64,000 nt of DNA from positions 186,001-250,000 of the IMG/VR virus record IMGVR_UViG_3300046092_000062. One strand, given 5' to 3'. Position numbers and translations under genes: made by a program. The first letter of the stretch is position 1. Every line of letters starts with the position of its first letter. Positions 3,980-25,185 of the stretch are shown one piece after another. The notes under the pieces were generated by a model. The model worked only from the letters and a program-made list of their open reading frames with translations. It was not told the origin of the DNA and made no database searches.

Positions 3980-4024
3980 GTATTACTTTTTTTGGTTGAC
4001 CCATAATGAGCGTTCATGTATAAT
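3970..4024 (+). promoter_or_regulatory. early promoter with upstream palindromic box
   Basis: AATACT-TG-AGTATT palindrome, T-tract, TTGACC(3996)-17-TATAAT(4019). Confidence 0.85.
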
Positions 4025-4052: not shown

Positions 4053-4409
4053 ATGAAATTCTTTCAAGAAACTACTGACTACAAAGACAAGATTTCAAAC
4101 GGCATCTACTTGCTGTCAGATGACAAGACACGTATGTTTGCCTATGTTGCACCAGGCAACAACACTGCAAAAGAATTCAAGCGCCCGATTCGCATCGACA
4201 CTCGTGGCCGCAGCTTCAAGCCTGTTACTAATACCTTCAACTATGTGATCCCTGCAGAAGTTGCCCCAGAAGTCCCGCAGTGGATTGTTAAAGGCAGCAA
4301 AGGCGATGAGTACATTGTGCGCAAAGACGGCTTGATGTATTCATGTACATGCAGCGGATTTAAATTTCGCGGTAGCTGCAAGCACGTCACGGAGATCAAA
4401 GGCGCATGA
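4053..4409 (+). CDS. SWIM-type zinc finger protein
   Basis: C-terminal YSCTCSGFKFRGSCKHV (CxC-xn-CxH). Confidence 0.75.
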   Translation: MKFFQETTDYKDKISNGIYLLSDDKTRMFAYVAPGNNTAKEFKRPIRIDTRGRSFKPVTNTFNYVIPAEVAPEVPQWIVKGSKGDEYIVRKDGLMYSCTCSGFKFRGSCKHVTEIKGA

Positions 4410-4615
4410 TTAAACGTCAGTATCATTACTATGGTGGCCGCAACGGCGATGCCTACTTCTGCAACTTTGTTGATGCAGCGGGCGGGCAAGAACACATTCG
4501 TACTGAACTAGCTAAGTGGAAAGCAACAGTTGCTAAAAGCAAAGCCAAATACACCTACAATGTCAAGTTCCACGACGAGCAGTTATACATGTTTTTTAGG
4601 ATCAAGTTTTCATGA
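4406..4615 (+). CDS. LRW-family mini-protein I-1
   Basis: tail FHDEQLYMFFRIKFS. Confidence 0.75.
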   Translation: MIKRQYHYYGGRNGDAYFCNFVDAAGGQEHIRTELAKWKATVAKSKAKYTYNVKFHDEQLYMFFRIKFS

Positions 4616-4863
4616 CAGAAGCGTGGATATTCGTTAATGGACAGAAGGTTCAGATTCCTCAGCATCCTTACCAAGCCAGGGAGTTTAGATGGCATTTGGG
4701 CGCAGAGTATAATTCTGCATTGGAGTGGGAAAATCCCGAGTTTGACAACATAAAAACTTGGTGCGAGCAAACTTGTGTTCCGCATACTTACAGAATGTTT
4801 TTGAGAAGTGTTTGGTTCTTTCGTGAGTCCGATGCCTTATTGTGCAAGTTGAGGTGGGTATGA
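4612..4863 (+). CDS. LRW-family mini-protein I-2
   Basis: WCEQ core; tail FFRESDALLCKLRWV. Confidence 0.85.
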   Translation: MTEAWIFVNGQKVQIPQHPYQAREFRWHLGAEYNSALEWENPEFDNIKTWCEQTCVPHTYRMFLRSVWFFRESDALLCKLRWV

Positions 4864-5090
4864 ACTGGCAGTTTTGGCGTAAGCAATATCGAGTGGCTGT
4901 GACAGAAAATGATTACAATGCTAAGATTGTAAAGCACATGGGCACTACTGGAAAACTCCATATGCAGTTTTTCGACTTTGTTAAGCAAGAGTTCAATGCT
5001 GATCGTGAGTGGAGTTGGAAGACCAGAGAGAATTTCCTAGTGTTTGATAATGAACATGACTACGCTATGTTTCTGTTAAGGATGCTGTGA
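4860..5090 (+). CDS. LRW-family mini-protein I-3
   Basis: start ATG 4860 (ATGA overlap); tail FDNEHDYAMFLLRML. Confidence 0.85.
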   Translation: MNWQFWRKQYRVAVTENDYNAKIVKHMGTTGKLHMQFFDFVKQEFNADREWSWKTRENFLVFDNEHDYAMFLLRML

Positions 5091-5341
5091 TGTTGATCGA
5101 ACTCGACGATGAATATCGTATGATTGGGTACTACATCGCCGTACTAGAAGATCCAATTGACAGCGGGCACGATTTGTGGTATCACGAATCATTCAAAGAC
5201 ACCGATGAATGGTGTGAGCAAACCTTTGGGGCGCAGGACATGTGGGGAGAAAATCCTGCTACAGGGTGGAAGCGTATGCGTAACAGATACTTCTTTACTA
5301 CAGATGCTGCCCGCGGGTTATTTGTATTGAGGTTTACATGA
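5087..5341 (+). CDS. LRW-family mini-protein I-4
   Basis: WCEQTFG core; tail FTTDAARGLFVLRFT. Confidence 0.85.
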   Translation: MMLIELDDEYRMIGYYIAVLEDPIDSGHDLWYHESFKDTDEWCEQTFGAQDMWGENPATGWKRMRNRYFFTTDAARGLFVLRFT

Positions 5342-5559
5342 TTGAAGTAGATATCGATAAAGAAGGCGGATATGGTCGTCACCACTGGTGGGAAAACTTT
5401 CGCGACTATGCTGAGGAACAGGGGTATAATTTCGATAATGCTGAGAATATCACCAAAGCACTTGCAGAATGGAACGCTATTGATAAGGACCCAGATTCCA
5501 CCAAGTTCTACTTTGAAAACGAGCAGGACCACTTGCTGTTTATGTTGAGGTTTACATGA
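5338..5559 (+). CDS. LRW-family mini-protein I-5
   Basis: tail FENEQDHLLFMLRFT. Confidence 0.85.
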   Translation: MIEVDIDKEGGYGRHHWWENFRDYAEEQGYNFDNAENITKALAEWNAIDKDPDSTKFYFENEQDHLLFMLRFT

Positions 5560-5840
5560 AAGTAAAAGACACACTGCAAATTGATTTGATCTACGGCACA
5601 CTCCGTCAACGCCTGCGGGAGTTTGTAGCAGAGACTCCTTGCTTGTATACAAATGACGGAGACGCTGTTAACCTTGTGTGTCATTATTTCCCCTGTTGGC
5701 AGTACAATGGTGCTGCACCGTTTGAAGAAGTTATGCTGTGGTGTGAAGAACATTTCGGCCGTGATTGGATTTGGAGATTTGAAACAATTTTCTTCAAGCA
5801 CGAACGTGATCGTGCAGTATTCTTATTGAGGTGGTCATGA
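5556..5840 (+). CDS. LRW-family mini-protein I-6
   Basis: WCEEHFG core; tail FKHERDRAVFLLRWS. Confidence 0.85.
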   Translation: MKVKDTLQIDLIYGTLRQRLREFVAETPCLYTNDGDAVNLVCHYFPCWQYNGAAPFEEVMLWCEEHFGRDWIWRFETIFFKHERDRAVFLLRWS

Positions 5841-6058
5841 CAACTCTTTACATCTCCGGGGATTACGACCAAAGCCCACTGGCATACAAAAACTTCTATC
5901 GAGCAGTGATAGAACCCAGGTTAATGGAAGTACACCGTGAATCAATTAGCGGAAGTGATCTCCTTAAAGAGTACAATGCACATTGGGATAATACATCTAA
6001 GAGCATTGTGTTTGACACTGAACACGATTTGACAATGTTTATGTTGAGGTGGGCATGA
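5837..6058 (+). CDS. LRW-family mini-protein I-7
   Basis: tail FDTEHDLTMFMLRWA. Confidence 0.85.
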   Translation: MTTLYISGDYDQSPLAYKNFYRAVIEPRLMEVHRESISGSDLLKEYNAHWDNTSKSIVFDTEHDLTMFMLRWA

Positions 6059-6306
6059 TTGTAAAAGAGTATTACCAAAACATTAACTGTAGCAAACCCA
6101 GGGACTACTTTGAGCGTTGGTATGCAGACGTGTGGGCACGACGAATCGGCACAAAGATCGCACAGCCCGGAGTGTTAGCTCGTGTACTCGAAGAAGAAAT
6201 TGCTCAAGTTGGTGCTTATCTCGAGGACAAAGATCGCGGGTACAAATTTGTAGCAACATTCAAAGACGAGCACGACTATACCATGTTTGTATTGAGGTGG
6301 TCATGA
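6055..6306 (+). CDS. LRW-family mini-protein I-8
   Basis: tail FKDEHDYTMFVLRWS. Confidence 0.85.
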   Translation: MIVKEYYQNINCSKPRDYFERWYADVWARRIGTKIAQPGVLARVLEEEIAQVGAYLEDKDRGYKFVATFKDEHDYTMFVLRWS

Positions 6307-6530
6307 AACTACGTGCCGACATTCGTCCATACTTTCAGAAGATTGCTGATTACTATTGGGACAACATTGGTCGTGACTTCTACAACGAAGGGCATCACAT
6401 AACCATTTGGGACTGGCTCAAGCGTGATTACTCTGTGGTTAAGATTGGGCAAATTGGCAGCAAGACTGAGTTATGGGTTACATTTCCAGATGAGCAGCAC
6501 ATGACTATGTTTATGTTGAGGTGGACATGA
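6303..6530 (+). CDS. LRW-family mini-protein I-9
   Basis: true start ATG 6303 (track ORF extended upstream); tail FPDEQHMTMFMLRWT. Confidence 0.85.
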   Translation: MKLRADIRPYFQKIADYYWDNIGRDFYNEGHHITIWDWLKRDYSVVKIGQIGSKTELWVTFPDEQHMTMFMLRWT

Positions 6531-6727
6531 AACAAGAGCTAACTATGCGCATGGATTGCGAATACACTTACATTCCATTTGCCAATAGCCGCACCAGCAT
6601 CGATTGGATAGAAGCACTACTTTGGTGCGAAGAGTTCGAAGGCATTGGACACTTTAGCATGGGAGGACATGGCATTTACTTCGAAAAGGAAAAAGATGCT
6701 ATAATGTTTACATTAATCAACTCATGA
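6527..6727 (+). CDS. LRW-family mini-protein I-10
   Basis: WCEE core; tail FEKEKDAIMFTLINS. Confidence 0.85.
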   Translation: MKQELTMRMDCEYTYIPFANSRTSIDWIEALLWCEEFEGIGHFSMGGHGIYFEKEKDAIMFTLINS

Positions 6728-7005
6728 AAAAGCAATATACAAGAGACTCCCTTATGAAAAAGGCACGTATTGAATCCGACCAGCTAAACACTATCTTCCA
6801 GAAGTGGGCGGCAAACAATGGGTATAAGACCTCAGGACATTGGATTGATCACCTTGATCGACTTAACCTGCGTTACGGCCCTGGCCAAGCGTTTGATCAT
6901 TATGTTTGGTCATGCGGTGGCCGCATTTACACAGAATACAGCAAGCGTTATGCAGACTTCTTTGAAGACGAAGATTTGATAATGTTTACATTAAGGCACC
7001 TATGA
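6724..7005 (+). CDS. LRW-family mini-protein I-11
   Basis: tail FEDEDLIMFTLRHL. Confidence 0.8.
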   Translation: MKKQYTRDSLMKKARIESDQLNTIFQKWAANNGYKTSGHWIDHLDRLNLRYGPGQAFDHYVWSCGGRIYTEYSKRYADFFEDEDLIMFTLRHL

Positions 7006-7187
7006 TAACAACTTTACGAGCATGGTCCAGAGTTAGTGTAAGAGACATTCAACCAGCAGTAGCATGGTGCAGTGAGAATCTTACCCACAATGATTGGGTG
7101 TGCAGTTCGATCCCAAACGACAACGAATTTAGCTTTCGATTCCGTAACGAAAAGATTGCTACAGAGTTTGCACTGAGATTTGCATGA
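7002..7187 (+). CDS. LRW-family mini-protein I-12
   Basis: WCSENL core; tail FRNEKIATEFALRFA. Confidence 0.85.
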   Translation: MITTLRAWSRVSVRDIQPAVAWCSENLTHNDWVCSSIPNDNEFSFRFRNEKIATEFALRFA

Positions 7188-7429
7188 TACGATTAGATCT
7201 TGTTAAAGACTATGCACCTATTCCGATATGGAACAAATTTGTTGGACACCTGCAAGAACAAGTGGGACCACAGGCAGTAACTGACGCTTATGTTAATACC
7301 GCACTAGCTGAGTACTGTGCAGTGTATTATATGGAAGAGGTGGGTAACATATATGAAAGTTCTGTGCTACACTGGATTGAGTTTGAAGATGAAGAATTGT
7401 ACTCTTGGTTTATGTTGAGGTGGGCATGA
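7184..7429 (+). CDS. LRW-family mini-protein I-13
   Basis: tail FEDEELYSWFMLRWA. Confidence 0.85.
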   Translation: MIRLDLVKDYAPIPIWNKFVGHLQEQVGPQAVTDAYVNTALAEYCAVYYMEEVGNIYESSVLHWIEFEDEELYSWFMLRWA

Positions 7430-7683
7430 TTAGCATATTGTTATCAGACAAGGGCAGTACTCCCGAACAAGCATGGTGGTGGAAGTTTTTACACGGCACG
7501 GATAAACGTAGCGGTCCGTCAACTACAGAAGACCGCATTGAAGCTATCAACTTGGAATTGCTAAATTGGTCAGCGCAGCTATGGCGACACGAGCAAACGG
7601 CTACGCGCCACAATGCCCGAAGCGCATACATTGATTTCTACGACGAACAAGCGTACACTTGGTTTGTGCCGAGGTGGTCATGA
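7426..7683 (+). CDS. LRW-family mini-protein I-14
   Basis: tail FYDEQAYTWFVPRWS (Pro at the conserved Leu). Confidence 0.85.
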   Translation: MISILLSDKGSTPEQAWWWKFLHGTDKRSGPSTTEDRIEAINLELLNWSAQLWRHEQTATRHNARSAYIDFYDEQAYTWFVPRWS

Positions 7684-7874
7684 TTGAAATTAAAATCAGC
7701 AAGAAACTTCGTAATGTATACGGGGAAAGTGGTACTCAGGTTGCTTGGAAATGGTGCTTAGATAACTTTGGCCCACCGGAACCAAACGGTAAGCGTTGGG
7801 CATGGGACACTATGCGCACATTTTGGTTTCATAAAGAAGAAGATGCTACACTGTTTGCACTGAGGTGGTTATGA
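7680..7874 (+). CDS. LRW-family mini-protein I-15
   Basis: WCLDNFGP core; tail FHKEEDATLFALRWL. Confidence 0.85.
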   Translation: MIEIKISKKLRNVYGESGTQVAWKWCLDNFGPPEPNGKRWAWDTMRTFWFHKEEDATLFALRWL

Positions 7875-8098
7875 CAACAATTTCAATGAGCCATAATGTT
7901 CTAACAAATGCAGGGTGGATCCGCATACCGCTTGACGCTGAAAAAGTTATGCAAGCTCGACGACATGAAAGTTATTTTGAATTTTTTGAAACTGCACACA
8001 TTCGCAACCGGTATGCAATCTTTAGTGTGCCCAATGGATACGATTTCTTTTTTCGAAATAAAAAAGATGCTACAGAGTTTGTGTTGAGGTGGGCATGA
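7871..8098 (+). CDS. LRW-family mini-protein I-16
   Basis: tail FRNKKDATEFVLRWA. Confidence 0.85.
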   Translation: MTTISMSHNVLTNAGWIRIPLDAEKVMQARRHESYFEFFETAHIRNRYAIFSVPNGYDFFFRNKKDATEFVLRWA

Positions 8099-8385
8099 CT
8101 AAAGAAGAATGGACGAAATGGAATCGCAAGATACAACTAAACAGCATCTACGGTTTAAATCTCTGTAAAGAAATAGTGGCACCAAGGGATCAAGCACTAA
8201 CAGCGATACAAAACGCATGGGCTCAATGGCACTGTGATATCAAACACAACGTAACAGACTTTGGGTTTAAAGACTGGTGCAAGCGTGAGCATGGGTTTGA
8301 ATACCAACAGAATAGTGACCGGAGTGTTGTCACTACTGTACTTGACGAGCAAAAGTATGCTTGGTTCTTACTAAAGTGGGCATGA
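8095..8385 (+). CDS. LRW-family mini-protein I-17 with N-terminal PolB motif-B-like fragment
   Basis: N-term NRKIQLNSIYG; tail VLDEQKYAWFLLKWA. Confidence 0.85.
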   Translation: MTKEEWTKWNRKIQLNSIYGLNLCKEIVAPRDQALTAIQNAWAQWHCDIKHNVTDFGFKDWCKREHGFEYQQNSDRSVVTTVLDEQKYAWFLLKWA

Positions 8386-8388
8386 AAG

Positions 8389-8598
8389 ATGCAAGTAGAG
8401 AAAATGTTCCATCACACTGTGCCTAGCTCTAATGTGTGCATACAAGCCAGTAAATGGTTGCTGGAAGAGCGTGGATACAAGTTCGTCATTGAAGCCGAAA
8501 CAGAAGGACGCGGCAACAGTTCTAGATACACTGGCAGATACACATTCAAGTTCTTGTGTGAGCAAGAGTATATGTGGTTTCTAATGAGGTGGGCATGA
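8389..8598 (+). CDS. LRW-family mini-protein I-18 (close paralogue of 23627)
   Basis: tail RYTGRYTFKFLCEQEYMWFLMRWA. Confidence 0.85.
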   Translation: MQVEKMFHHTVPSSNVCIQASKWLLEERGYKFVIEAETEGRGNSSRYTGRYTFKFLCEQEYMWFLMRWA

Positions 8599-8599
8599 C

Positions 8600-8779
8600 A
8601 TGTTAACATACCGTATGATTGACTGGGTCAACATTCAACAACGCATGATTGAAGGCGGACTCAGTGATATTCCCAATGGGCGATTTCATGACAGCTACCG
8701 TAAGGACGATTACTTGTACTTTATGGTTGAGTTCGACACACCCGAGGATGAAATGATGTTTTTATTGAGGTGGGCATGA
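8600..8779 (+). CDS. LRW-family mini-protein I-19 (59 aa, missing from ORF track)
   Basis: hand translation MLTYRMIDWVNIQQ...FDTPEDEMMFLLRWA. Confidence 0.8.
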   Translation: MLTYRMIDWVNIQQRMIEGGLSDIPNGRFHDSYRKDDYLYFMVEFDTPEDEMMFLLRWA

Positions 8780-9000
8780 ACTCAAAACAAAGACGACGTG
8801 ATCGCAGAGCATGGAAACACGACATTGTGTTTACACACGAACAAGTTTATGAACGTGGTTACAACGACATGTGGGACTGGTGTGTTACTGTTTTTAATAA
8901 CAGGGGCAACAAGTGGAGAGAGCCGTATGGTCCTCCGGGCGTTAGATGGCAGTTTACCAAGCCAGAATACGCTGTGATGTTTGCACTACGCTGGCAATAA
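8776..9000 (+). CDS. LRW-family mini-protein I-20
   Basis: DWCVTVF core; tail FTKPEYAVMFALRWQ. Confidence 0.85.
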   Translation: MNSKQRRRDRRAWKHDIVFTHEQVYERGYNDMWDWCVTVFNNRGNKWREPYGPPGVRWQFTKPEYAVMFALRWQ

Positions 9001-9421: not shown

Positions 9422-10738
9422 ATGAACAAGCCATGGGACGTAATCGCAGAACTCGAAAGTGACAACAGCCGCCTGTTTAAGGAAGCAGTTATTGCCCGTG
9501 AGAGCAAAGCCGGTAACACAGAAGTGTTTCGGGGTTTTCGTGCTGCATACGATGCAATGGTGACATTCGGTGTTAAGAAAGTTGATGTCAAAACTGGCGA
9601 CGGCCCTGGCATCAGCTCGGGCGCATTTTGGGACATTGCCCGCAAACTTGCAGACCGTGAACTCACAGGTGGTGCTGCTCAAACTGCTATCAACTTCTTG
9701 CGTATGCAAGCAACAGAAGAAGAATGGAACAACTGGTATCGTCGCATCTTGATCAAGGACATGCGTTGCGGTGCTAGCGACAGTATTGTTAACAAGGTTG
9801 CTGATCCCAAATACCATGTGCCAGTTTTTGAATGCCAACTTGCGCACGATGGTGCCAAGCACGAAGGCAAGATCAAAGGTCACAAGACTATCGAAGTCAA
9901 GCTGGATGGTATGCGTGTGCTTACCATTGTTTACCCAACAGGTCAAGTTGATCAATACAGCCGCAATGGTAAAGAGCTGGTTAACTTTGAAGTTGTTAAG
10001 CAACAGATTGCCAAGCACGCCAAGTTCTTTAAAGAGCCAATGGTACTCGACGGTGAGATCATGAGCGCCAGCTTCCAAGACTTGATGAAGCAGGCCAAGC
10101 GCAAGACCAACGTCGACGCAGATGATGCAGTGCTTAACTTGTTTGACATTATCCCACTCGACGAGTTCCAAGCAGGTGTGGGTTCACGTACCCAAGCAGA
10201 ACGCAGCGTGGATCTTTTGGCTTGGTTTACACCTTGCGAAGATCACATGCCCAACGTCACTGTGGTGGGTCAAGAAGATGTGGATCTCGATACCCCAGAA
10301 GGCTACGCACGGTTCAAAGAGATCAATGCACAAGCCATTGCAGCAGGTTACGAAGGCATTATGCTTAAAGAACCCAATGCAGTTTACGAGTGCAAGCGCA
10401 CAGTGAGCTGGCTCAAAATCAAGCCCTTCATTGAAGTGTCACTGACTGCGGTTGCCATTGAAGAAGGTACTGGCAAGAACGTGGGCAAAATGGGTGCAGT
10501 GTTGTTTGAAGGCACAGACGACGGCAAGTTCATCCGCGTAAGCGTTGGTGGCGGCTGGAGCGATAAGGATCGTGCAGACATTTGGGCTGCTCGCAATACA
10601 CCAGAATCTGTTGTAGGCGATGTAGGCGAAGTTCGTGCAGATGCTGCTACGCTGAATCAAGACAGCACAGATGTTTGGAGCTTGCGATTCCCACGTTTTA
10701 AAACATGGCGCGGCTTTGCTAAAGGTGAGAAGCTGTGA
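9422..10738 (+). CDS. lig: ATP-dependent DNA ligase
   Basis: motif I EVKLDG, SRNGK, LDGEI, FDII, EGIMLK, WLKIK, OB-fold end SLRFPRF. Confidence 0.95.
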   Translation: MNKPWDVIAELESDNSRLFKEAVIARESKAGNTEVFRGFRAAYDAMVTFGVKKVDVKTGDGPGISSGAFWDIARKLADRELTGGAAQTAINFLRMQATEEEWNNWYRRILIKDMRCGASDSIVNKVADPKYHVPVFECQLAHDGAKHEGKIKGHKTIEVKLDGMRVLTIVYPTGQVDQYSRNGKELVNFEVVKQQIAKHAKFFKEPMVLDGEIMSASFQDLMKQAKRKTNVDADDAVLNLFDIIPLDEFQAGVGSRTQAERSVDLLAWFTPCEDHMPNVTVVGQEDVDLDTPEGYARFKEINAQAIAAGYEGIMLKEPNAVYECKRTVSWLKIKPFIEVSLTAVAIEEGTGKNVGKMGAVLFEGTDDGKFIRVSVGGGWSDKDRADIWAARNTPESVVGDVGEVRADAATLNQDSTDVWSLRFPRFKTWRGFAKGEKL

Positions 10739-16979: not shown

Positions 16980-17162
16980 ATGAACTCTATCACAATCAAT
17001 GGTGCCGATAAGGCACTCGAAGCAGGCGGCTGGTGCAGAAAACAATTTGGTATTAAGGGATGGACAATAGACTTGAACAGTATGTTGGGCAACAATCCCA
17101 CGTATAGGTTTGATTTCTCTAGTCCCGCTGATGCTACACTATTTGCATTAAAATGGCGGTAA
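16980..17162 (+). CDS. LRW-family mini-protein II-1
   Basis: WCRKQFG; tail FSSPADATLFALKWR. Confidence 0.85.
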   Translation: MNSITINGADKALEAGGWCRKQFGIKGWTIDLNSMLGNNPTYRFDFSSPADATLFALKWR

Positions 17163-17410
17163 CTTTAGTCGTTCATGAATTTACACTAGGTGACGTAGAT
17201 GATCCCGAAATCTACGCAGCCGTGCCCTTGTATGAATGGCAATTGAGTGATGCCGGTAAATGGGTTATGGAAAATGCTATTGAAACTCCCCAGTGGGGCA
17301 GAATCAATGATCATCTCACGTACTCACTTCGTTACAGAGTAACTGCAAAGCTCAAAGATGAGGATGCAACCTTTTTCAAGTTAAAGTATGATCACACTAA
17401 CCGACGCTGA
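17153..17410 (+). CDS. LRW-family mini-protein II-2
   Basis: tail LKDEDATFFKLKY. Confidence 0.8.
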   Translation: MAVTLVVHEFTLGDVDDPEIYAAVPLYEWQLSDAGKWVMENAIETPQWGRINDHLTYSLRYRVTAKLKDEDATFFKLKYDHTNRR

Positions 17411-17615
17411 GTGGCGTAATATTAGAAATCAAATCAGAATTGAATACGCCGACAAGCCCAGTGTTTGGCTATTGCGCTCTGTAATGAAGCGTGAGTTAGG
17501 ATTTACTGACCGCCATCATCAAGTATACAGAGAACAAACAGGTTACATCACTACTGTCTACTTGGACTTCTTTAATGATGCAGCAGAAACAATGTTTAGA
17601 TTGAAGTACTTATAA
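17388..17615 (+). CDS. LRW-family mini-protein II-3
   Basis: tail FFNDAAETMFRLKYL. Confidence 0.8.
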   Translation: MITLTDAEWRNIRNQIRIEYADKPSVWLLRSVMKRELGFTDRHHQVYREQTGYITTVYLDFFNDAAETMFRLKYL

Positions 17616-17831
17616 TTGGAATTCATTGCACGTATACTGCCCAAGTTAATTGCTGGTGTCCTAAGCATTATGGATGCCAGTCGCTTGCGGGATAAAGTAT
17701 ACCAGCAACAACACGAGCATGAGTTGATGTGGACTGCACTAGATGATATCGCACGTATGCACCCAGATCATCCGTCAGGAAAAATGGCAAAGAAAACACT
17801 AGATGAAGTTACTACACGCTACGGTAGGTAG
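17616..17831 (+). CDS. hypothetical protein (non-LRW)
   Basis: 71-aa ORF abutting previous stop. Confidence 0.65.
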   Translation: MEFIARILPKLIAGVLSIMDASRLRDKVYQQQHEHELMWTALDDIARMHPDHPSGKMAKKTLDEVTTRYGR

Positions 17832-18219
17832 GTTTCAGGCATGGCGCCATGCACGTTACCTCAAAAAGAAGGGCTGGACCCAGCGCCAGTTTGACCTCAT
17901 CAACGATCCTGATTTTTGCGCACGTGGCAGCAGTATTCGTAAAGATGTCTATCGCGGCTATCCCTACTTAATCTCGTTTGACGACACAGTACCAATGGAA
18001 CGGCGATATGGTCAAGGATGGATCACCGTAGTTGATAATATGACAGCGTGGTGCGAAGCGAATGTTACAGGCAAATGGAGAGAAGATATCCTTGCAGTCG
18101 ACAAGAGTTGGGACGACGAATGGACGCAAGGGTGCATGGGCCTAAGCCACAACATTCTATTCTTTGCATTTAACAATGAGCAAGATGCAGTAATGTTTAG
18201 TCTATACTGGAGTGTGTAA
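17803..18219 (+). CDS. LRW-family protein II-4 with long N-terminal extension
   Basis: AWCEAN core; tail FNNEQDAVMFSLYWSV; start uncertain. Confidence 0.8.
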   Translation: MKLLHATVGRFQAWRHARYLKKKGWTQRQFDLINDPDFCARGSSIRKDVYRGYPYLISFDDTVPMERRYGQGWITVVDNMTAWCEANVTGKWREDILAVDKSWDDEWTQGCMGLSHNILFFAFNNEQDAVMFSLYWSV

Positions 18220-18437
18220 TGAACATCGAATTCAAACATCGCCCGGACCGATACTACGAGTGGGAAATGTACTACAGTCCACAGGGCCCCGAAATGGGCG
18301 AAGTATACGGTTGGTGCTGGGAAACATTCGGTCACCCAGGACTAGCATTAGGTAATGGAACTTGGGATAACCACGGCGGATGGATTAAGTTTCGCAGAGA
18401 AGAAGATATGACTATGTTTATGTTGAGGTGGAGCTAA
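18219..18437 (+). CDS. LRW-family mini-protein II-5
   Basis: WCWETFG; tail FRREEDMTMFMLRWS. Confidence 0.85.
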   Translation: MNIEFKHRPDRYYEWEMYYSPQGPEMGEVYGWCWETFGHPGLALGNGTWDNHGGWIKFRREEDMTMFMLRWS

Positions 18438-18703
18438 TGGAATTATTTTATGGTGGCGGCGGACGCAGTAACCCGGACTTTATACACAAGGTGCGGGTTA
18501 GCAAAAAACGTGCAGGTGATGTTAGTCCACTGATGAAGTGGTGCGACGATTACCCAACTGGTGATAAGGGCTACTTTAAACGCTACTACATCGATTGGCG
18601 TGGTGACACAAAGAGCTGGGATAGTGACTATGTTACATTCCAATTTGAATGGGAACAAGCTGCTATCATGTTTGCTCTAAGTTTTGCGGACAGCGTATGC
18701 TAA
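18437..18703 (+). CDS. LRW-family mini-protein II-6
   Basis: KWCDD; tail FEWEQAAIMFALSF. Confidence 0.8.
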   Translation: MELFYGGGGRSNPDFIHKVRVSKKRAGDVSPLMKWCDDYPTGDKGYFKRYYIDWRGDTKSWDSDYVTFQFEWEQAAIMFALSFADSVC

Positions 18704-18981
18704 CAACAGTAAGAATTTGGGTACTAGATCACAATGTTATCCCCGACCAATCCGATGTAGACTACTGCAAGAACAACGGCATACAACTAGACGCCCAGCA
18801 AGGTGAGCATCAGCGTATCGAAACTGGCAGCGGGCAGGTCTATCACTACCGCACCTCACCCGGGGTCATAAAGCTAACCACATTTGACGAGAAAAGCGAA
18901 TGTATGTTACAATTACGCTACGCAGGTAGAATCCATCTAATGCAACAAATTTACACCGAGTCTGTAACACATTCGTATTAA
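18697..18981 (+). CDS. divergent LRW-like protein II-7
   Basis: FDEKSECMLQLRY; similar to 2936. Confidence 0.65.
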   Translation: MLTTVRIWVLDHNVIPDQSDVDYCKNNGIQLDAQQGEHQRIETGSGQVYHYRTSPGVIKLTTFDEKSECMLQLRYAGRIHLMQQIYTESVTHSY

Positions 18982-19310
18982 TGAAAGTTCGTCTTAAAAA
19001 TGGCCGCATTGGAGAGCATCGCCTTAAGTGGGACAACAACCCAATGGGCATTGCGCCATTGCTAATAGGATCGGAGACTGTGGAATTGGATATCACTGAA
19101 CGAATTTACAACGGGCCCGACTGCTACCCGTGGCGCAAGACGTTTGCACTTTGGCCAGTTAAAACAATAGGTGGTAGCCGCATTTGGTTACGCACTGTTT
19201 ACAAACAACGATTCTGGGCAGTGTGGGGCAAAGGCTTTCACATGGAGCCCTGGGTTGAATATGCAACACTATTTGAGATTTTAAAACATGAACCTAAATC
19301 ATCTATCTGA
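18981..19310 (+). CDS. Trp-rich hypothetical protein (non-LRW)
   Basis: WRKTFALWPVKT.GG..IWL..VY. Confidence 0.75.
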   Translation: MKVRLKNGRIGEHRLKWDNNPMGIAPLLIGSETVELDITERIYNGPDCYPWRKTFALWPVKTIGGSRIWLRTVYKQRFWAVWGKGFHMEPWVEYATLFEILKHEPKSSI

Positions 19311-19764
19311 CGTAGAGCTGCTACGCTACTTGGATTTGACTAGCACTGATCCATTGGTTATTCGTTTGATCAACATGCTGTCTGCACCTAACGGTGGGCT
19401 TGTTGGTGATTTAGTGGAAGCAGGCATGGATCCTAACACATGGGTCTTTACAGACGATCACCAAGACTACTACCCCGGAGATTACATCACCCACTTGCAA
19501 AAGATGGTTGCCTACGCAGAAGATGACCGTGCGGTAGCCGAAATGGATTTAGCGGATGCTCGTGAAGAACTTGATAAGTTAAGTCGACGCACCGTTACAG
19601 AACTTCTAGTAGATGCGCAGCGGGCAATTGACTCTGCAAAATCCAATCACCTTTACGCAGTTAGAGAAGCTGAAAAAGCTCACGAAGTAATTGACAAGGT
19701 ACAAGCAGAGAATAGACATCTCAAAGAGCAATTGGGCATGTGGAATATTTTAGGGACAGAGTAA
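19288..19764 (+). CDS. coiled-coil hypothetical protein
   Basis: heptad-like C-terminal half. Confidence 0.75.
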   Translation: MNLNHLSDVELLRYLDLTSTDPLVIRLINMLSAPNGGLVGDLVEAGMDPNTWVFTDDHQDYYPGDYITHLQKMVAYAEDDRAVAEMDLADAREELDKLSRRTVTELLVDAQRAIDSAKSNHLYAVREAEKAHEVIDKVQAENRHLKEQLGMWNILGTE

Positions 19765-19765
19765 C

Positions 19766-20032
19766 ATGGACAACGTTATTCACAGCAACAAATATTTCCG
19801 ATTAACTAAATGGCGCCATCGCAAAAGCGACAAGGTGCATTATCGCGTTGAGATGACATACAGTTGGTTGAATCTGGACCAAGAAGCAGGGGAGAAAAGT
19901 TTTCCTGAGCAAGTTCGCGATGTAATCGACCCAACTCGTTGTCGTGCTGGGCAAGCTGGCAACCACTGGAAATACCGTAACTTAGAAGAAGCTACAAAAG
20001 CCTATACATTTTTAGTAATGAAATTCTCATGA
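19766..20032 (+). CDS. LRW-family mini-protein II-8 (divergent)
   Basis: tail YRNLEEATKAYTFLVMKFS. Confidence 0.7.
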   Translation: MDNVIHSNKYFRLTKWRHRKSDKVHYRVEMTYSWLNLDQEAGEKSFPEQVRDVIDPTRCRAGQAGNHWKYRNLEEATKAYTFLVMKFS

Positions 20033-20310
20033 GTTATAAACTTAAACTAGCACACAAGCATCACGATCAATTAGATCAAATTGAAGCATGGCTCAACGCT
20101 AACGTTGGCCCTGGTAGCAAACGACATGCAAACAACACCTGGCTCGGTGCCGAAGATTGGTACTGCTATGAAGAAGCACTAGTTCCGGGCAGCGAGGAAG
20201 AGGAAGAAGAGTATTACGACAACGATGACAATCTTGAAGATATTTCAGATTTGATCTTTGTATTCCGCCGCGAAAGCGATCTGTTAATGTTTAGTTTGAA
20301 ATGGGCATAG
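20029..20310 (+). CDS. LRW-family mini-protein II-9 with acidic insertion
   Basis: SEEEEEEYYDNDDNLED; tail FRRESDLLMFSLKWA; TAG stop. Confidence 0.85.
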   Translation: MSYKLKLAHKHHDQLDQIEAWLNANVGPGSKRHANNTWLGAEDWYCYEEALVPGSEEEEEEYYDNDDNLEDISDLIFVFRRESDLLMFSLKWA

Positions 20311-20311
20311 C

Positions 20312-20668
20312 ATGTCTAGTCCTTTTAAACTCACAGATCTCCCCAACAACACTTGGTCAGTAACATGGACCGAGAATAACTTTGCACATAATGCTAAACA
20401 GCGAGACAAGTTAGTAGATATTCTGTTTAGCGAAATTGGATGCCGCGACGTTGGCCTAGGCATTAAACTAAACAATGGCGAACTAGAAACACTGTGGATT
20501 GGTGAAAAAGAGTATTTTCAACGGTCCGACATAGCCCACGGATGGGAAGACATGTATGTTGTTCGTGGTGTTGTGTTCATTCACGAACACGAAGCTAGGG
20601 AGTTTCATCAATTGATGGAAAGTCGATTGGCTTGGTACTACTTAAAGCAAGGTGCAGCAGTTGCTTGA
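20312..20668 (+). CDS. divergent LRW-like protein II-10
   Basis: FIHEHEAREF followed by a helical extension. Confidence 0.65.
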   Translation: MSSPFKLTDLPNNTWSVTWTENNFAHNAKQRDKLVDILFSEIGCRDVGLGIKLNNGELETLWIGEKEYFQRSDIAHGWEDMYVVRGVVFIHEHEAREFHQLMESRLAWYYLKQGAAVA

Positions 20669-20879
20669 AATTCCATACCCAACCCTAATGAATGGCAGTC
20701 GCACGTTCTCTATGGAAACTCTACAAAAGTGGCTTGACGCACACTTTCCTCAAGAACGTTCCTGCATTGTCCGTGTTGCTATTGTTAACAAAGGGCCTGG
20801 GAGGTACGGCGACGAACGATGGGCGATTCGTTTTTATCGGGATGAAGATGCAACACTGTTTGGATTGTTATGGCAGTAA
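20652..20879 (+). CDS. LRW-family mini-protein II-11
   Basis: tail FYRDEDATLFGLLWQ; start GTG 20652 or ATG 20688. Confidence 0.8.
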   Translation: MQQLLEIPYPTLMNGSRTFSMETLQKWLDAHFPQERSCIVRVAIVNKGPGRYGDERWAIRFYRDEDATLFGLLWQ

Positions 20880-21127
20880 CCTATAAAACTAATCCGGGAT
20901 TCCCAGGTGTTAATTTTCCCGTGTTGCACCGTGTTGTCTATGCACACACCATCGATGGTGTCCCAGCACAATGGCAAATCAGCTACAAGGATTATATAGT
21001 CAATGAATGGCTTAAAGCAAACACACGCCATCCTTACTACCACAGTCCCGGGTATCTTCGTGAAAAGTTCATTGAGTTTGAATGTGATGAAGAAGCAGTG
21101 CTATTCGCACTAAAGTGGGCAAAGTAA
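20870..21127 (+). CDS. LRW-family mini-protein II-12
   Basis: tail FECDEEAVLFALKWAK. Confidence 0.85.
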   Translation: MAVTYKTNPGFPGVNFPVLHRVVYAHTIDGVPAQWQISYKDYIVNEWLKANTRHPYYHSPGYLREKFIEFECDEEAVLFALKWAK

Positions 21128-21357
21128 TGTACAGCAAGACTCACCGATTTTTTAAATTCAAACACGTTCCCAAGGACTTTATATGGGGCAGTGAGGAAAT
21201 TGACCTGTGCCGCCTGCACATTGGTGACAACCGTATCACGATGCCGCTTGTGGACCGCGAATGGTTTAGTTCGCCCGATGGTGTATGGATTCGACATGAT
21301 TGTCTGGATAACGAAATCATAACTTGGTTTGCACTGAAAGCAAGCAATGAAGTTTGA
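21127..21357 (+). CDS. LRW-family mini-protein II-13
   Basis: tail LDNEIITWFALKA. Confidence 0.75.
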   Translation: MYSKTHRFFKFKHVPKDFIWGSEEIDLCRLHIGDNRITMPLVDREWFSSPDGVWIRHDCLDNEIITWFALKASNEV

Positions 21358-21607
21358 ACTGCTAGAAGGGCGCATACACGGAGCCCGTTACTACACAGTT
21401 AGACCAGACTTTAATTGGTGGCTTTCGGGCAGCTTAAACAATACAAATGCCACCTGGCGTGATATGTTAGAATGGTGTGTAGAAGTATTCGGTCCTAGCG
21501 CAGAAATGGGTGTGTGGGAACCCGGTGCTCGTTGGTATGCTAACAATGCAAAGTTTTGGTTTCGTAATGCAGAAGATAGGACAGCGTTTTTGCTGAGATG
21601 GTCATGA
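21347..21607 (+). CDS. LRW-family mini-protein II-14
   Basis: EWCVEVFGP; tail FRNAEDRTAFLLRWS. Confidence 0.85.
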   Translation: MKFELLEGRIHGARYYTVRPDFNWWLSGSLNNTNATWRDMLEWCVEVFGPSAEMGVWEPGARWYANNAKFWFRNAEDRTAFLLRWS

Positions 21608-21837
21608 AACCAGACCTAGTCCAATTTTACTGCGAACGAGATCCCTATTACGCTAAATCACGTGAGTACTACATGATGAACGTAAATCATTACGAAACTC
21701 CTTATTACCTTTGGATGATACAGGAATATCGCACTGTGCTGTTAAACAAACAGGGTAGCTGGAGCGACAGGGCTGAACAGCATTGGGGCTTTATTAATGA
21801 ATCGGATAGAACAATTTTTATGTTGAGATGGTCATGA
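21604..21837 (+). CDS. LRW-family mini-protein II-15
   Basis: tail FINESDRTIFMLRWS. Confidence 0.85.
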   Translation: MKPDLVQFYCERDPYYAKSREYYMMNVNHYETPYYLWMIQEYRTVLLNKQGSWSDRAEQHWGFINESDRTIFMLRWS

Positions 21838-22064
21838 CAACTACTGTTGAATTTGGTAAAGATCGTTATCACTTACAGGGTGAAATGGAAGAATGGTGCG
21901 AGCACAATATTGGGTCTAATCCTCGTTATAGCAACCACGTTTGGTCCAAGCCAGTTGAGTGGGAAGGGTTAGGCACATGGTGCATGGCTAGTGCGTTTGG
22001 CACAACATTTTTCTACTTTAAACATCGCAAAGATGCAACCTTCTTTGCATTGAAATGGAAATAA
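21834..22064 (+). CDS. LRW-family mini-protein II-16
   Basis: EWCEHNIG; tail FKHRKDATFFALKWK. Confidence 0.85.
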   Translation: MTTTVEFGKDRYHLQGEMEEWCEHNIGSNPRYSNHVWSKPVEWEGLGTWCMASAFGTTFFYFKHRKDATFFALKWK

Positions 22065-22065
22065 T

Positions 22066-22428
22066 ATGGATGATCGGAATCTTTGGCACCTGCTATGTGA
22101 TTGGGTAAAATTTGGTAAGTTTATAGAATGGAAAGAATGGTTTTACTGGACCATTGTGCCTGGCACTAGCATTGGGGTCATTTGGCCAAATGGCCCAATT
22201 TCTCTGGGTTGTGATCCTGATGGCGAAGAGGTAATCGTCGACTCCGCTGATCCAAACGATCACTATCGCCCATGGTTAGAAGAGCATGTCGGGCGTCAGG
22301 GCATTGATTGGGAATGGAGAATGGGAACTTTTGGATTTTGGACAGATGAAATAGATACTCTAGACATTAAGTTTCGAGTGGGAAAGACAAAGTATGCTAC
22401 AATAGCAGCATTGATGTGGGGCCAATGA
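22066..22428 (+). CDS. LRW-family protein II-17, extended N-terminus
   Basis: WLEEHVG core; tail KYATIAALMWGQ. Confidence 0.75.
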   Translation: MDDRNLWHLLCDWVKFGKFIEWKEWFYWTIVPGTSIGVIWPNGPISLGCDPDGEEVIVDSADPNDHYRPWLEEHVGRQGIDWEWRMGTFGFWTDEIDTLDIKFRVGKTKYATIAALMWGQ

Positions 22429-22628
22429 GAACCAAAACTACAAGAGAACTATATCCGTACCATGTGCGCTTTAAGCGTACAGGAGATTGGTATGGCAATG
22501 ATGGTACTTGGTATCAAATTAGCACATGGCTTCGAGAACACTTTGGGCAGAATTGGGAATATCTTGACAGTATGTTTATGTTCTCTAAGGAAGAACACAA
22601 AATGCTTTTTATAATGAGATGGCTATGA
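22425..22628 (+). CDS. LRW-family mini-protein II-18
   Basis: WLREHFG; tail FSKEEHKMLFIMRWL. Confidence 0.85.
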   Translation: MRTKTTRELYPYHVRFKRTGDWYGNDGTWYQISTWLREHFGQNWEYLDSMFMFSKEEHKMLFIMRWL

Positions 22629-23044
22629 CAAAACGCAACACCGTAGTAATGGATATCGAAACCACAACAGCAGTAATGCCGCGTGGGTCTTCTTCTGTTT
22701 TTCAGGGCATCACAGGTGGAATACATCCTGGAGAAATGATGATTTATGCCGGGGGCAGACAAACTGGCAAGTCCACACTGTCTTACCATATATTAAAGAG
22801 CAGATACTACGAAATGGGCATCAAGGAACAAATCCAGACGTTGGATACGTTTACACTAGATGGTGCTACATGGTACACTGTACACTGTCGTCCTTCGACT
22901 ATTAGTGGGTGGGTGCAAGAGCAAGACTCCGATATGTGGTGCCGACACTACAACACAGGCGCACTGCGAGTTGAATACCCCACGTTTAACAACTACAACA
23001 TACACGAAGAACTGTATTCAATGTTATTGTTGAAATGGTCATGA
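22625..23044 (+). CDS. LRW-family protein II-19 with DnaB-like Walker A fragment
   Basis: GGIHPGEMMIYAGGRQTGKST; tail IHEELYSMLLLKWS. Confidence 0.8.
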   Translation: MTKRNTVVMDIETTTAVMPRGSSSVFQGITGGIHPGEMMIYAGGRQTGKSTLSYHILKSRYYEMGIKEQIQTLDTFTLDGATWYTVHCRPSTISGWVQEQDSDMWCRHYNTGALRVEYPTFNNYNIHEELYSMLLLKWS

Positions 23045-23406
23045 AAATCTTAAAACAAACTGTAGCAGCTAAGACTTGCACCCTCAAAGCCAATTGGACT
23101 ATTGATCGCTCAGCAGACAATAGCTTTACGATCGGTGATGATACGTGGCAAGAGGTTGGGGCAGCACTACGAAAAGAGATTGATGAAGAAATTGTTAACA
23201 ATATTAGAAGGCATGAGCTTATGTTAAAAGGATGGGTCAAGGCCCCGTTTACTAGCGACAAGTTTGCTACACCAGGCAACCACCAGATAGCAGAAGTTAC
23301 TGCATGGATTCACATGAACACCACGGCGCAATATCAAATCTTCGGCCGAGAGTTCTGGTTCTCAAGCAAGGAAGACTTAACACTGTTTGTACTGAGGTGG
23401 GCATGA
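23041..23406 (+). CDS. LRW-family protein II-20 with major-capsid (gp23-like) fragment
   Basis: ILKQTVAAKT..LKANWT...AAL.KEIDEEIV; tail FSSKEDLTLFVLRWA. Confidence 0.8.
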   Translation: MKILKQTVAAKTCTLKANWTIDRSADNSFTIGDDTWQEVGAALRKEIDEEIVNNIRRHELMLKGWVKAPFTSDKFATPGNHQIAEVTAWIHMNTTAQYQIFGREFWFSSKEDLTLFVLRWA

Positions 23407-24377: not shown

Positions 24378-24378
24378 T

Positions 24379-24961: not shown

Positions 24962-24998
24962 TATTTCACGCTACGTACTGCCAACACAGTCCGAGCAA

Positions 24999-25175: not shown

Positions 25176-25185
25176 TAAGTACAGT

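What the first reader, a model, noticed from the sequence alone, without database searches (positions are those of the whole stretch)
8095..8385. Family-B DNA polymerase motif B fragment fused to an LRW module
Seen: WNRKIQLNSIYG within the first 20 residues. Established (recalled): PolB motif B is K..(L/I)NS.YG, with T4 gp43 NRKILINSLYG. This puts the capture phenomenon in array I as well as array II.
Basis: partly seen in the sequence, partly recalled or inferred. Interest (0 to 1): 0.75.

Follow-up and report, generated by a model that had tools for sequence, protein, structure and literature searches.

The report
Polymerase-like peptide heading small phage protein
A small, conserved gene of a 320-kb freshwater T4-like phage starts with a 12-residue string that matches the DNA-polymerase "motif B". 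The string sits on a swappable head peptide in front of a widespread unnamed small-protein module, and whether it was copied from a polymerase gene remains likely but unproven.

Summary
ORF 8095-8385 (+, 96 aa) reads WNRKIQLNSIYG at residues 9-20, an exact K-x3-NS-x-YG.

The gene is real: dN/dS is about 0.12, and orthologs occur in related 220-366 kb phages. It belongs to a very large, unnamed family of small phage proteins, at least 2,546 clusters at 50% identity. These have a constant C-terminal "LRW" core and lie in tandem, translationally coupled arrays.

The N-terminal about 30 residues are an optional head piece. Orthologs carry none, this PolB-like one, or a helicase P-loop-like one.

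Capture of core-gene pieces is proven for other members:
- Two major-capsid gp23 pieces are significant.
- One DnaB/gp41-helicase piece is borderline.

For this ORF the PolB link is suggestive only.
- For: it is the best non-polymerase match to a PolB profile in the whole genome, with HHalign P 2.7e-5 and 0 of 400 shuffles reaching its score. The decapeptide occurs in all 80 PolB genes fetched from viral contigs.
- Against: Pfam, PDB, BLAST and tblastn searches find nothing, and there is no DNA-level trace. The phage's own DNA ligase ties with PolB in an agnostic proteome search.

Verdict: partly supported. It is not a polymerase. I put the chance that it is an old polymerase-derived peptide at about 50%.

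The parts
8095..8385 (+). The ORF of the finding: 96 aa, an LRW-family small protein, a real gene under purifying selection.
   Evidence: Fourteen orthologs at 54-93% identity. For residues 31-96, dN is 0.10-0.13 and dS 0.8-1.0.
8119..8154 (+). Codons for WNRKIQLNSIYG (residues 9-20), the PolB motif-B-like string. It lies inside the predicted N-terminal helix (residues 3-18, nt 8101-8148).
   Evidence: regex. (profile scores). (helix, pLDDT 54-64). The string is invariant at R, K, Q, L, N, S, Y and G in 8 orthologs.
8149..8184 (+). Flexible, fast-evolving linker (residues 19-30) between the head helix and the core.
   Evidence: pLDDT is below 50 for residues 19-28. dN is 0.14-0.75. Length varies among orthologs.
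8185..8382 (+). LRW core (residues 31-96). Predicted order is helix, helix, strand, strand, helix, ending ...DEQKYAWFLLKWA.
   Evidence: pLDDT 83-92. Family alignments A2/A3. 2,546 clusters match the core profile. No known fold or Pfam family matches.
8077..8098 (+). Conserved gene junction GTTTGTGTTGAGGTGGGCATGA. It holds the last codons (F.LRWA) of the upstream member, a Shine-Dalgarno-like GAGGTGG, and the ATGA stop/start overlap.
   Evidence: The same junction recurs at nearly every array I member.
4406..9000 (+). Array I: about 20 tandem LRW-family ORFs with overlapping stops and starts. A stray member lies at 3725-3979.
   Evidence: Synteny with a 354-kb relative.
3996..4024 (+). Near-consensus sigma-70-like promoter (11 of 12) upstream of array I. 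The next one is at 9030-9058, right after the array.
   Evidence: No strong promoter or terminator lies between array members.
16980..26910 (+). Array II: about 28 LRW-family ORFs, interrupted by a few unrelated genes.
24593..24667 (+). Head piece of ORF 24563-24961, residues 11-35. It is a copy of the most conserved gp23 (major capsid) segment: own gp23 residues 59-83, T4 gp23 about 98-120.
   Evidence: Pfam Gp23 E 3.2e-6, 27.2 bits, above the cut-off. Genome scan. BLASTP 56% identity, E 1e-5 against the proteome. T4 mapping.
23041..23208 (+). Head piece of ORF 23035-23406, residues 3-58. It is a copy of gp23 residues 151-210.
   Evidence: Pfam Gp23 E 7e-5. BLASTP 43% identity, E 2e-7 against the proteome.
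22715..22849 (+). Head piece of ORF 22619-23044, residues 33-77. It resembles the Walker-A region of the phage's DnaB/gp41-type helicase (genome 109580-111019).
   Evidence: BLASTP 32% identity, E 0.011. It is the only second DnaB_C hit in the genome, E 0.017. The same piece heads orthologs P0009/P0011 of the finding's ORF.
26650..26676 (+). DNDISSMYP in ORF 26638-26910, a weak look-alike of PolB motif A.
   Evidence: It is the second-best array hit to the PolB profile, P 0.026, aligned to PolB 386-401, which is at chance level. A similar piece occurs in P0114. Its ortholog in L098 lacks the piece.
9422..10738 (+). ATP-dependent DNA ligase gene. Its residues 97-110 (ATEEEWNNWYRRI) resemble residues 1-13 of the finding's ORF, making it the rival source.
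   Evidence: Pfam. HHalign P 3.6e-4 with a single sequence and 2.6e-4 with a profile. 25 of 39 nt identical.

Best explanation
ORF 8095-8385 is a genuine small accessory gene of a large, unnamed family of T4-like-phage proteins, here called LRW proteins.

Shown:
- The family has a constant C-terminal core of about 60 residues ending F.LRW.
- Its genes sit in long tandem arrays with ATGA stop/start overlaps and an SD built into the last codons.
- The array is preceded by a near-consensus sigma-70-type promoter.
- Many members carry an optional N-terminal head piece that differs between orthologs.
- In several members the head piece is an in-frame copy of the most conserved stretch of a core phage gene (gp23 capsid, gp41-type helicase).

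Inferred for this ORF:
- The 20-residue head helix is most likely an old in-frame piece of a T4-type family B polymerase gene, taken from the fingers helix that carries motif B.
- It may have been joined to a few codons of other origin.
- It has been kept because the peptide itself is useful.

The protein is not a polymerase.

Proposed working (inference only):
- The LRW core is a constant scaffold or effector.
- The head peptide, on a disordered linker, is an address or bait that mimics a conserved surface of a core phage protein.
- The protein would be made early, and would either occupy a host or rival-phage factor that recognises that motif, or interfere with it.
For: Real gene with optional head piece:
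- Orthologs and dN/dS.
- Orthologs with no room for a head piece.
- Orthologs with a helicase-type head piece.

Family size and constant core.

Proven captures in sister genes.

PolB likeness:
- Exact K-x3-NS-x-YG occurs only in PolB and in this ORF in the genome.
- It is the top of 49 array ORFs against a 9-sequence PolB HMM, E 0.0096, with 6 of 9,800 shuffles reaching it.
- It is the best non-PolB frame in the whole genome.
- HHalign of the 8-ortholog head profile against a 15-sequence PolB profile not chosen by motif gives P 2.7e-5, probability 75%, aligned exactly on motif B. None of 400 column shuffles exceeds 22.4, against 34.4 observed.
- Among 47 array head parts the next-best P is 0.026.
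- RKIQLNS[FLIMV]YG is encoded in at least 120 viral contigs. All 80 fetched are PolB genes, including this phage's own clade.
- The head helix is the best-conserved part besides the C-terminus: 16 of 20 residues identical in a 55%-identical ortholog.
Against: - Only 10-13 residues match.
- Agnostic searches find nothing: Pfam, PHROGs, PDB phmmer, BLASTP against the own proteome (20.8 bits, E 3.7), tblastn against 50,697 phage records, and the Pfam PolB genome scan at E up to 10.
- Genome-wide E for the HMM hit is 0.79.
- Correcting HHalign P for 372 proteins and 47 ORFs gives about 0.5.
- The phage's own ligase ties with PolB in the agnostic proteome scan.
- There is no DNA trace: 21 of 39 nt against the own PolB, and at best 24 of 30 with third positions at chance against 80 PolBs.
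- There is no obvious reason why catalytic residues should persist in a non-enzyme.
- Function and expression are untested. No RNA run was listed, and the complex prediction gave no answer.
Confidence: 0.5

Rival explanations
1. Chance or convergent resemblance. The head helix is an amphipathic peptide with its own function, and it only happens to spell the motif-B consensus.
For: - All agnostic database searches are negative.
- The genome-wide HMM E is 0.79.
- A second, unrelated protein (ligase) matches the same peptide equally well in the proteome scan, which shows the level of the noise.
- One shuffle reached 13 bits.
- The motif was noticed post hoc among many possible famous motifs.
Against: - HHalign P is 2.7e-5, with calibrated controls: 400 shuffles reach at most 22.4, and the other 46 array heads give P of 0.026 or more.
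- Regex expectation for the arrays is 0.0014.
- The family demonstrably captures core-gene pieces.
- The decapeptide is otherwise seen only in PolB.
Confidence: 0.33
2. The head piece derives wholly or in part from the neighbouring ATP-dependent DNA ligase gene (residues 97-130, ATEEEWNNWYRRI...). It could also be a mosaic of a ligase piece (residues 1-13) and a PolB piece (residues 11-20) joined at the shared W.R[RK]I.
For: - HHalign of Q1-31 against ligase 97-130 gives P 3.6e-4 (single sequence) and 2.6e-4 (13-sequence profile), probability 42%.
- The ORF is the outlier among 47 heads against the ligase profile: 5.5e-4 against a next-best of 0.047.
- 25 of 39 nt are identical, with a 12-nt exact run.
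- The ligase gene lies 1 kb downstream.
- Other heads look composite, for example ORF 22619.
Against: - The profile does not improve on the single sequence.
- P is ten times worse than for PolB.
- The 12-nt run is purine-rich and expected several times per genome.
- BLASTP gives E 0.56.
Confidence: 0.12
3. The head piece is a decayed copy of the gp23 Gol-region piece, which is the commonest head piece in the family.
For: - There are visual similarities: NRKIQL..I against ARKIILPMI in P0072.
- TNLCKEI is shared with P0089, whose head begins gp23-like.
Against: - An HMM of seven gp23 head pieces does not find the ORF or any ortholog at E below 10.
- Pfam Gp23 gives no hit.
Confidence: 0.03
4. 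It is a remnant (pseudogene fragment) of a second polymerase gene, or a functional mini-polymerase part.
For: Only the motif itself.
Against: - The protein is 96 aa and has no motif A or C and no exonuclease motifs.
- Flanking ORFs are LRW genes, not polymerase pieces.
- The gene is under purifying selection as a fusion.
- The predicted fold is unrelated.
Confidence: 0.01

Closest known systems
Family B DNA polymerase motif B (region III, K-x3-NS-x-YG; fingers helix of T4/RB69 gp43)
   Same: Residues 11-20 match natural T4-type motif-B variants at 9 of 10 positions (RKIQLNSLYG in many myovirus PolBs). Residues 10-20 match T4 NRKILINSLYG at 8 of 11. The segment is predicted helical, as in the polymerase.
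   Different: Nothing else of the polymerase is present. There is no Pfam hit, the protein is 96 aa, the string lies in a tethered low-confidence helix, and there is no DNA-level similarity.
gp23-piece LRW proteins of the same phage and its relatives (ORFs 24563-24961 and 23035-23406; P0072, P0093, P0130, P0151, P0163)
   Same: They have the same architecture: a head piece from a conserved stretch of a core gene, then a linker, then the LRW core. They lie in the same arrays, and the head piece is optional among orthologs.
   Different: Their head pieces are 25-60 residues long and statistically secure (E 1e-5 to 4e-10). This one has 10-13 matching residues and is not secure.
T4 Gol peptide of gp23 (cofactor of the Lit protease acting on EF-Tu)
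   Same: The commonest captured piece covers T4 gp23 about 98-120. The review PMC3014915 describes the Gol region as a 29-residue stretch and the most conserved part of gp23. From memory, unverified, Gol is residues 93-122.
   Different: This concerns sister genes, not this ORF. No Lit, EF-Tu or other partner has been shown. The EF-Tu co-fold gave no answer.
Modular shuffling of small early ORFs in hyperplastic regions of T4-like phages (PeSL cassettes; PMC2839356, PMC4122927)
   Same: The arrays are blocks of small, fast-turning-over early ORFs between core genes. Gene content and order differ between close relatives, and conserved junction sequences recur.
   Different: Here the repeated junction is coding (F.LRW plus SD plus ATGA), not a promoter/stem-loop. 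No promoter or terminator lies between members. The members are paralogs of one family, and in-frame pieces of core genes are fused to them.
Bacterial immune sensors of the core phage proteome (Avs families, Lit, CapRel; PMC13581612)
   Same: The source proteins of the head pieces (major capsid, RecA/DnaB-type ATPase, possibly DNA polymerase) belong to the classes those sensors recognise. Lit and CapRel read short capsid motifs.
   Different: The link is conceptual only. The polymerases sensed there are family A, and no sensor, host or interaction is known for this phage.

Membership tests
Family B DNA polymerase (Pfam PF00136/PF03104) | Motif B, K-x3-NS-x-YG | tested here: met
   Residues 12-20, KIQLNSIYG.
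Family B DNA polymerase (Pfam PF00136/PF03104) | Motif A (D-x2-SLYPS), motif C (YGDTDS) and exonuclease motifs I-III | tested here: not met
   None is present in the 96-aa sequence or its orthologs.
Family B DNA polymerase (Pfam PF00136/PF03104) | Profile match above the curated cut-off | tested here: not met
   hmmscan at E up to 10 gives no family. The genome scan with PF00136 at E up to 10 finds only the true PolB. phmmer against PDB finds none.
Family B DNA polymerase (Pfam PF00136/PF03104) | Polymerase fold and size (palm, fingers, thumb; over 700 aa) | tested here: not met
   The AF2 model is a tethered helix plus a 66-residue alpha/beta core.
LRW small-protein family (unnamed; defined here by profile A3) | C-terminal core with W[CL].E.[FH]G ... 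W ... F.F..E.D...F.L[RK]W and a stop within 0-3 residues | tested here: met
   The ORF has ...DWCKREHGFEY...TTVLDEQKYAWFLLKWA. See alignments A2/A3. The profile finds 2,546 clusters, always with the core C-terminal.
LRW small-protein family (unnamed; defined here by profile A3) | Membership of a tandem, same-strand array with overlapping stop and start | tested here: met
   The upstream junction is GAGGTGGGCATGA. There are about 20 neighbours of the same build, and the same is seen in relatives.
Captured core-gene head piece (as in the gp23-piece members) | Statistically significant similarity to the source gene in a search not aimed at that gene | tested here: inconclusive
   Aimed tests are positive. 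Agnostic tests are negative or tied with ligase.
Captured core-gene head piece (as in the gp23-piece members) | The piece lies N-terminal to the core and is present or absent or exchanged among orthologs | tested here: met
   P0012-14 and P0007-8 lack it, and in L099 there is no room upstream. P0009 and P0011 carry a helicase-type piece instead.
Captured core-gene head piece (as in the gp23-piece members) | Nucleotide-level trace of the donor gene | tested here: not met
   21 of 39 nt against the own PolB. Best 24 of 30 and third positions at chance against 80 PolBs. The secure gp23 pieces were compared with gp23 at the protein level only here (56% and 43% identity), not at the DNA level.
PeSL-type mobile regulatory cassettes of T4-like phages | Early promoter plus stem-loop between the shuffled ORFs | tested here: not met
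   Near-consensus promoters occur only at 3185, 3996 and 9030. Nothing comparable lies between array members.

The most novel reading that the evidence does not exclude
The LRW arrays are a phage-encoded library of baits or decoys. A constant small core domain displays, on a flexible linker, short peptides copied from the most conserved and most immune-visible stretches of the phage's own core proteins: the capsid Gol region, the helicase P-loop region and polymerase motif B. The proteins would be made early, to occupy or blunt host sensors, or rival-phage factors, that read those motifs. Head pieces would be exchanged between array members by recombination at the repeated core and junction. 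The ORF of this finding would be the polymerase-motif member of that library.
Probability: 0.15. Interest if true: 0.85.

Novelty: new variant of a known kind. Interest (0 to 1): 0.55.

Why it matters
Arrays of small early genes are the least understood part of large phage genomes. Here one family fills two arrays with about 50 genes in a 320-kb phage. It has thousands of clusters in environmental viruses and no Pfam, PHROG or structural match.

Some members are secure in-frame fusions to the most conserved stretch of the major capsid protein. Others look like pieces of replication proteins. This points to an undescribed way of making small proteins by recombining short motifs of essential genes with a constant module.

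If the head peptides act as mimics of motifs that bacterial immunity reads, this would be a new class of counter-defence. If they do not, the family is still a clear example of exon-shuffling-like evolution in phages.

For this ORF the practical lesson is also a caution. A perfect famous motif in 12 residues is not by itself proof of ancestry.

Tried and rejected
- megablast of 7000-10800 against 50,697 phage records: no match.
- tblastn of the ORF and of a typical family member against phages: nothing. The nearest cultured relative by PolB is Sinorhizobium phage Phosso at 52%.
- Pfam and PHROGs on the ORF and its neighbours: nothing for the core.
- phmmer against PDB: nothing.
- Word-indexed search with residues 1-40 only: just three close orthologs.
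- Metagenome scan for more orthologs: 7 loci, no new head types.
- Structure searches of the AF2 model: Foldseek PDB best E 0.33, AFDB clusters best E 0.29, VIA wide best Z 3.3. The Atlas returned only viral hypothetical clusters plus weak HTH-like rows. No fold was assigned.
- gp23-piece HMM against the ORF: no hit, so that rival is rejected.
- PolB HMM on P0114 and ORF 26638 (motif-A look-alikes): chance level.
- Co-fold of the gp23-piece protein with E. coli EF-Tu: "no answer", not evidence either way.
- RNA runs: none was listed. DNA of this stretch is held by many freshwater metagenome runs.
- The PolB loci fetched by the decapeptide pattern were not used for any significance estimate, because they were selected by the motif.

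Full report
**1. What is there**

The window is bases 186,001-250,000 of a 320,767-bp virus record. It comes from freshwater metagenomes. The phage is a distant T4-like jumbo phage: it encodes a gp23-type capsid protein, a gp41/DnaB-type helicase and a family B polymerase. The nearest cultured relative by PolB is Sinorhizobium phage Phosso at 52% identity.

The finding's coordinates are one ORF: ATG 8095 to TGA 8385, + strand, 96 aa. It reads MTKEEWTKWNRKIQLNSIYG... and ends ...YAWFLLKWA. The quoted string is residues 9-20, nt 8119-8154.

**2. The gene and its family**

The ORF is one of about 20 tandem + strand ORFs (array I, about 4406-9000). Each ends F.LRW[AST]. The stop of each overlaps the next start, in the junction GTTTnTnTTGAGGTGGnCATGA, so the last codons also supply the Shine-Dalgarno sequence. 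A second array of about 28 members lies at about 16980-26910.

Near-consensus sigma-70-type promoters lie at 3996-4024 and 9030-9058, with none comparable inside array I. This fits one early, translationally coupled transcription unit. That reading is an inference, and no RNA run was listed.

Fourteen orthologs at 54-93% identity exist in related phage contigs of up to 366 kb. For residues 31-96, dN is 0.10-0.13 and dS is 0.8-1.0, so this is a real gene.

A profile of the last 48 residues of 41 members finds 2,546 clusters (50%-identity representatives) at E of 1e-3 or better. All are 40-142 aa with the module at the C-terminal end. Neither Pfam nor PHROGs knows the module.

The AF2 model has mean pLDDT 76. 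It shows a low-confidence helix (residues 3-18), a disordered linker (19-28) and a confident core (H31-49, H58-66, E68-72, E78-82, H85-95). No structure search assigns a fold.

**3. The head piece is optional and exchangeable**

Orthologs fall into three groups:
- P0001-6 and P0010 carry MTKEEW.KW[ND]RK[IM]QLNS[IV]YG.
- P0007, P0008 and P0012-14 start directly at the core. In L099/L100 the upstream gene abuts the start, so nothing is missing.
- P0009 and P0011 carry a different head...GEMMVIMAGRRTGKSTLYG. This is the head of another array member of this phage (ORF 22619-23044).

The same holds for ORF 26638-26910, whose ortholog in L098 lacks the head. Gene order is mosaic between relatives, and in L101 members of arrays I and II are interleaved. 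Some family proteins contain two cores in one chain (P0015, P0037, P0113, P0152), so fusions between neighbours occur.

**4. Capture of core-gene pieces is real in sister genes**

| Array member | Residues | Source | Evidence |
|---|---|---|---|
| ORF 24563-24961 | 11-35 | own gp23 59-83 | 56% identical; Pfam Gp23 E 3.2e-6, above the cut-off; E 1e-5 against the own proteome |
| ORF 23035-23406 | 3-58 | own gp23 151-210 | 43% identical; E 2e-7 |
| ORF 22619-23044 | 33-77 | helicase Walker-A region | E 0.011; the only second DnaB_C hit in the genome, E 0.017 |

Of 150 family representatives, 5 hit Gp23 (best E 4e-10). Apart from a coiled-coil model hit by two members, no other Pfam family was hit by more than one member.

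The commonest piece maps to T4 gp23 about 98-120. The review PMC3014915 describes the Gol region as the most conserved part of gp23. The residue numbers 93-122 for Gol are from my memory only.

**5. Is the PolB likeness more than chance?**

Tests aimed at PolB are positive:
- K.{3}NS.YG occurs in only two of 5,208 six-frame open frames: PolB and this ORF. Expectation is 0.085 per genome and 0.0014 per array set.
- I built an HMM from nine diverse PolBs: own, Phosso, S-RIM12, T4, FBB1, GG32, SD25, HVTV-1 and phiKp_9. It ranks this ORF first of 49 (5.4 bits, E 0.0096; next 0.33). Six of 9,800 shuffles reach that score. It is the best non-PolB frame in the genome, but at E 0.79.
- HHalign of the eight-ortholog head profile against a 15-sequence PolB profile (none chosen by the motif) gives P 2.7e-5, probability 75%, with Q7-30 on T535-560.
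- Four hundred column shuffles give a mean of 12.5, sd 2.2 and a maximum of 22.4, against 34.4 observed.
- The other 46 array heads give P of 0.026 or more, so the P-values are calibrated.
- DNA encoding RKIQLNS[FLIMV]YG occurs in at least 120 viral contigs. All 80 fetched copies lie at about residue 500 of long PolB ORFs. These include clade relatives such as ...WDKRQLVRKIQLNSLYGAILN.

Tests not aimed at PolB are negative:
- Pfam, PHROGs, PDB, tblastn against phages and the Pfam PolB genome scan find nothing.
- BLASTP against the own proteome gives 20.8 bits, E 3.7, which is background level.
- The head profile run against all 372 own ORFs of 120 aa or more gives a tie. PolB scores 26.3 (P 8e-4) and the DNA ligase encoded 1 kb downstream scores 26.3 (P 3.6e-4, Q1-31 on residues 97-130). 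The next score is 19.8.
- A 13-sequence ligase profile gives P 2.6e-4, no better than the single sequence.

At the DNA level there is no trace of copying:
- 21 of 39 nt match the own PolB.
- The best of 80 PolBs is 24 of 30, with third positions at chance.
- 25 of 39 nt match the ligase, with a purine-rich 12-nt run.

The corrected figure is about 0.01 for this ORF against the proteome and about 0.5 for all ORFs against the proteome. The proven habit of the family raises the prior. I put descent from a polymerase gene at about one half.

**6. How it most likely works**

Shown:
- The protein has a constant core, a disordered and fast-evolving linker, and an exchangeable head peptide.
- The head is conserved. 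It is 16 of 20 identical in a 55%-identical ortholog, with dN 0.04-0.14 and unusually low dS of 0.23-0.5.

Inferred:
- The head is a functional peptide displayed by the core.
- By analogy with the gp23 and helicase heads, it mimics a conserved surface of a core protein.

Sensors of bacterial immunity recognise capsid proteins, RecA/DnaB-type ATPases and DNA polymerases, and Lit and CapRel read short capsid motifs (PMC13581612). This makes a bait or decoy role conceivable but untested. The one co-fold tried, the gp23-piece protein with E. coli EF-Tu, gave no answer.

**7. Comparison and novelty**

- The ORF is not a family B polymerase. Only motif B is met, and all other defining features were tested and not met.
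- It is a member of the LRW family defined here.
- It resembles the shuffled small early ORFs of T4-like hyperplastic regions (PMC2839356, PMC4122927). It differs in that the repeated junction is coding, the members are paralogs, and core-gene pieces are fused in frame.
- I found no description of such fusions in the paper searches I ran. That is not proof of absence.

**8. Verdict**

- Observation: confirmed.
- Interpretation: partly supported.
- Novelty: new variant of a known kind.
- Interest: 0.55, mostly owing to the family-level phenomenon, which is secure. The polymerase origin of this one head piece is not secure.

Noticed in passing
window 24563-24961 and 23035-23406: Two array II genes begin with secure in-frame copies of gp23 major-capsid segments: own gp23 residues 59-83 and 151-210. 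The first is the most conserved gp23 stretch (T4 about 98-120), which is the Gol-peptide region. The same piece heads many family members elsewhere (P0072, P0093, P0130, P0151, P0163).
   Followed up: yes
window 22619-23044; P0009/P0011 (L098:1471-1785): This 141-aa member carries NTVVMDIETTT followed by a DnaB/gp41-helicase Walker-A-like stretch. A shortened version of this head replaces the PolB-like head in two orthologs of the finding's ORF, so heads move between family members.
   Followed up: partly
window 26638-26910; P0114: The heads LIDNDISSMYPGS and LLDSDVQSMYPTTFKVLKARPE resemble PolB motif A (D-x2-SLYPS ... PE). By profile they are at chance level (P 0.026; HMM -1.3 bits).
   Followed up: partly
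window 8095-8133 vs 9710-9748 (ligase gene 9422-10738): Residues 1-13 of the ORF (MTKEEWTKWNRKI) resemble ligase residues 97-109 (ATEEEWNNWYRRI). 25 of 39 nt are identical, with a 12-nt exact run. The head may be a mosaic.
   Followed up: partly
window 8095-8154: Synonymous divergence in the first 20 codons (dS 0.23-0.5) is well below that of the rest of the gene (0.8-1.0). This suggests a nucleotide-level constraint at the coupled start, or a more recent exchange of the head. The sample is small.
   Followed up: no
P0015, P0037, P0113, P0152 (family representatives): These proteins of 105-142 aa contain two LRW cores in tandem. They look like read-through fusions of neighbouring array genes.
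   Followed up: no
L101/L102 (NCBI metagenome contigs), 2600-5750: Orthologs of array I and array II members of this phage lie interleaved in one array. Identities range from 55% (the finding's ORF) to 97% (ORF 7680-7874) within the same contig, so members evolve at very uneven rates or are replaced.
   Followed up: partly
window 3185-3214, 3996-4024, 9030-9058: Three near-perfect TTGAC[AC]-N17/18-TATAAT sites lie on the + strand and bracket array I. The overall promoter count is not above that of shuffles.
   Followed up: no
L096 (T4 record OL964735.1, gp23): In this 'mutant T4 clone' record the conserved ...CGVQPM of the Gol region reads ...CGVQPT. This phage's own gp23 and most of the gp23-type head pieces aligned have M at that position.
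   Followed up: no
window 23304-23630 vs 23035-23406: The longest ORF calls of neighbouring array II members overlap by about 100 nt. In array II the junction is ...AGATGGTCATGA, with two in-frame ATGs (MVMT...), so true starts are ambiguous by two codons.
   Followed up: no
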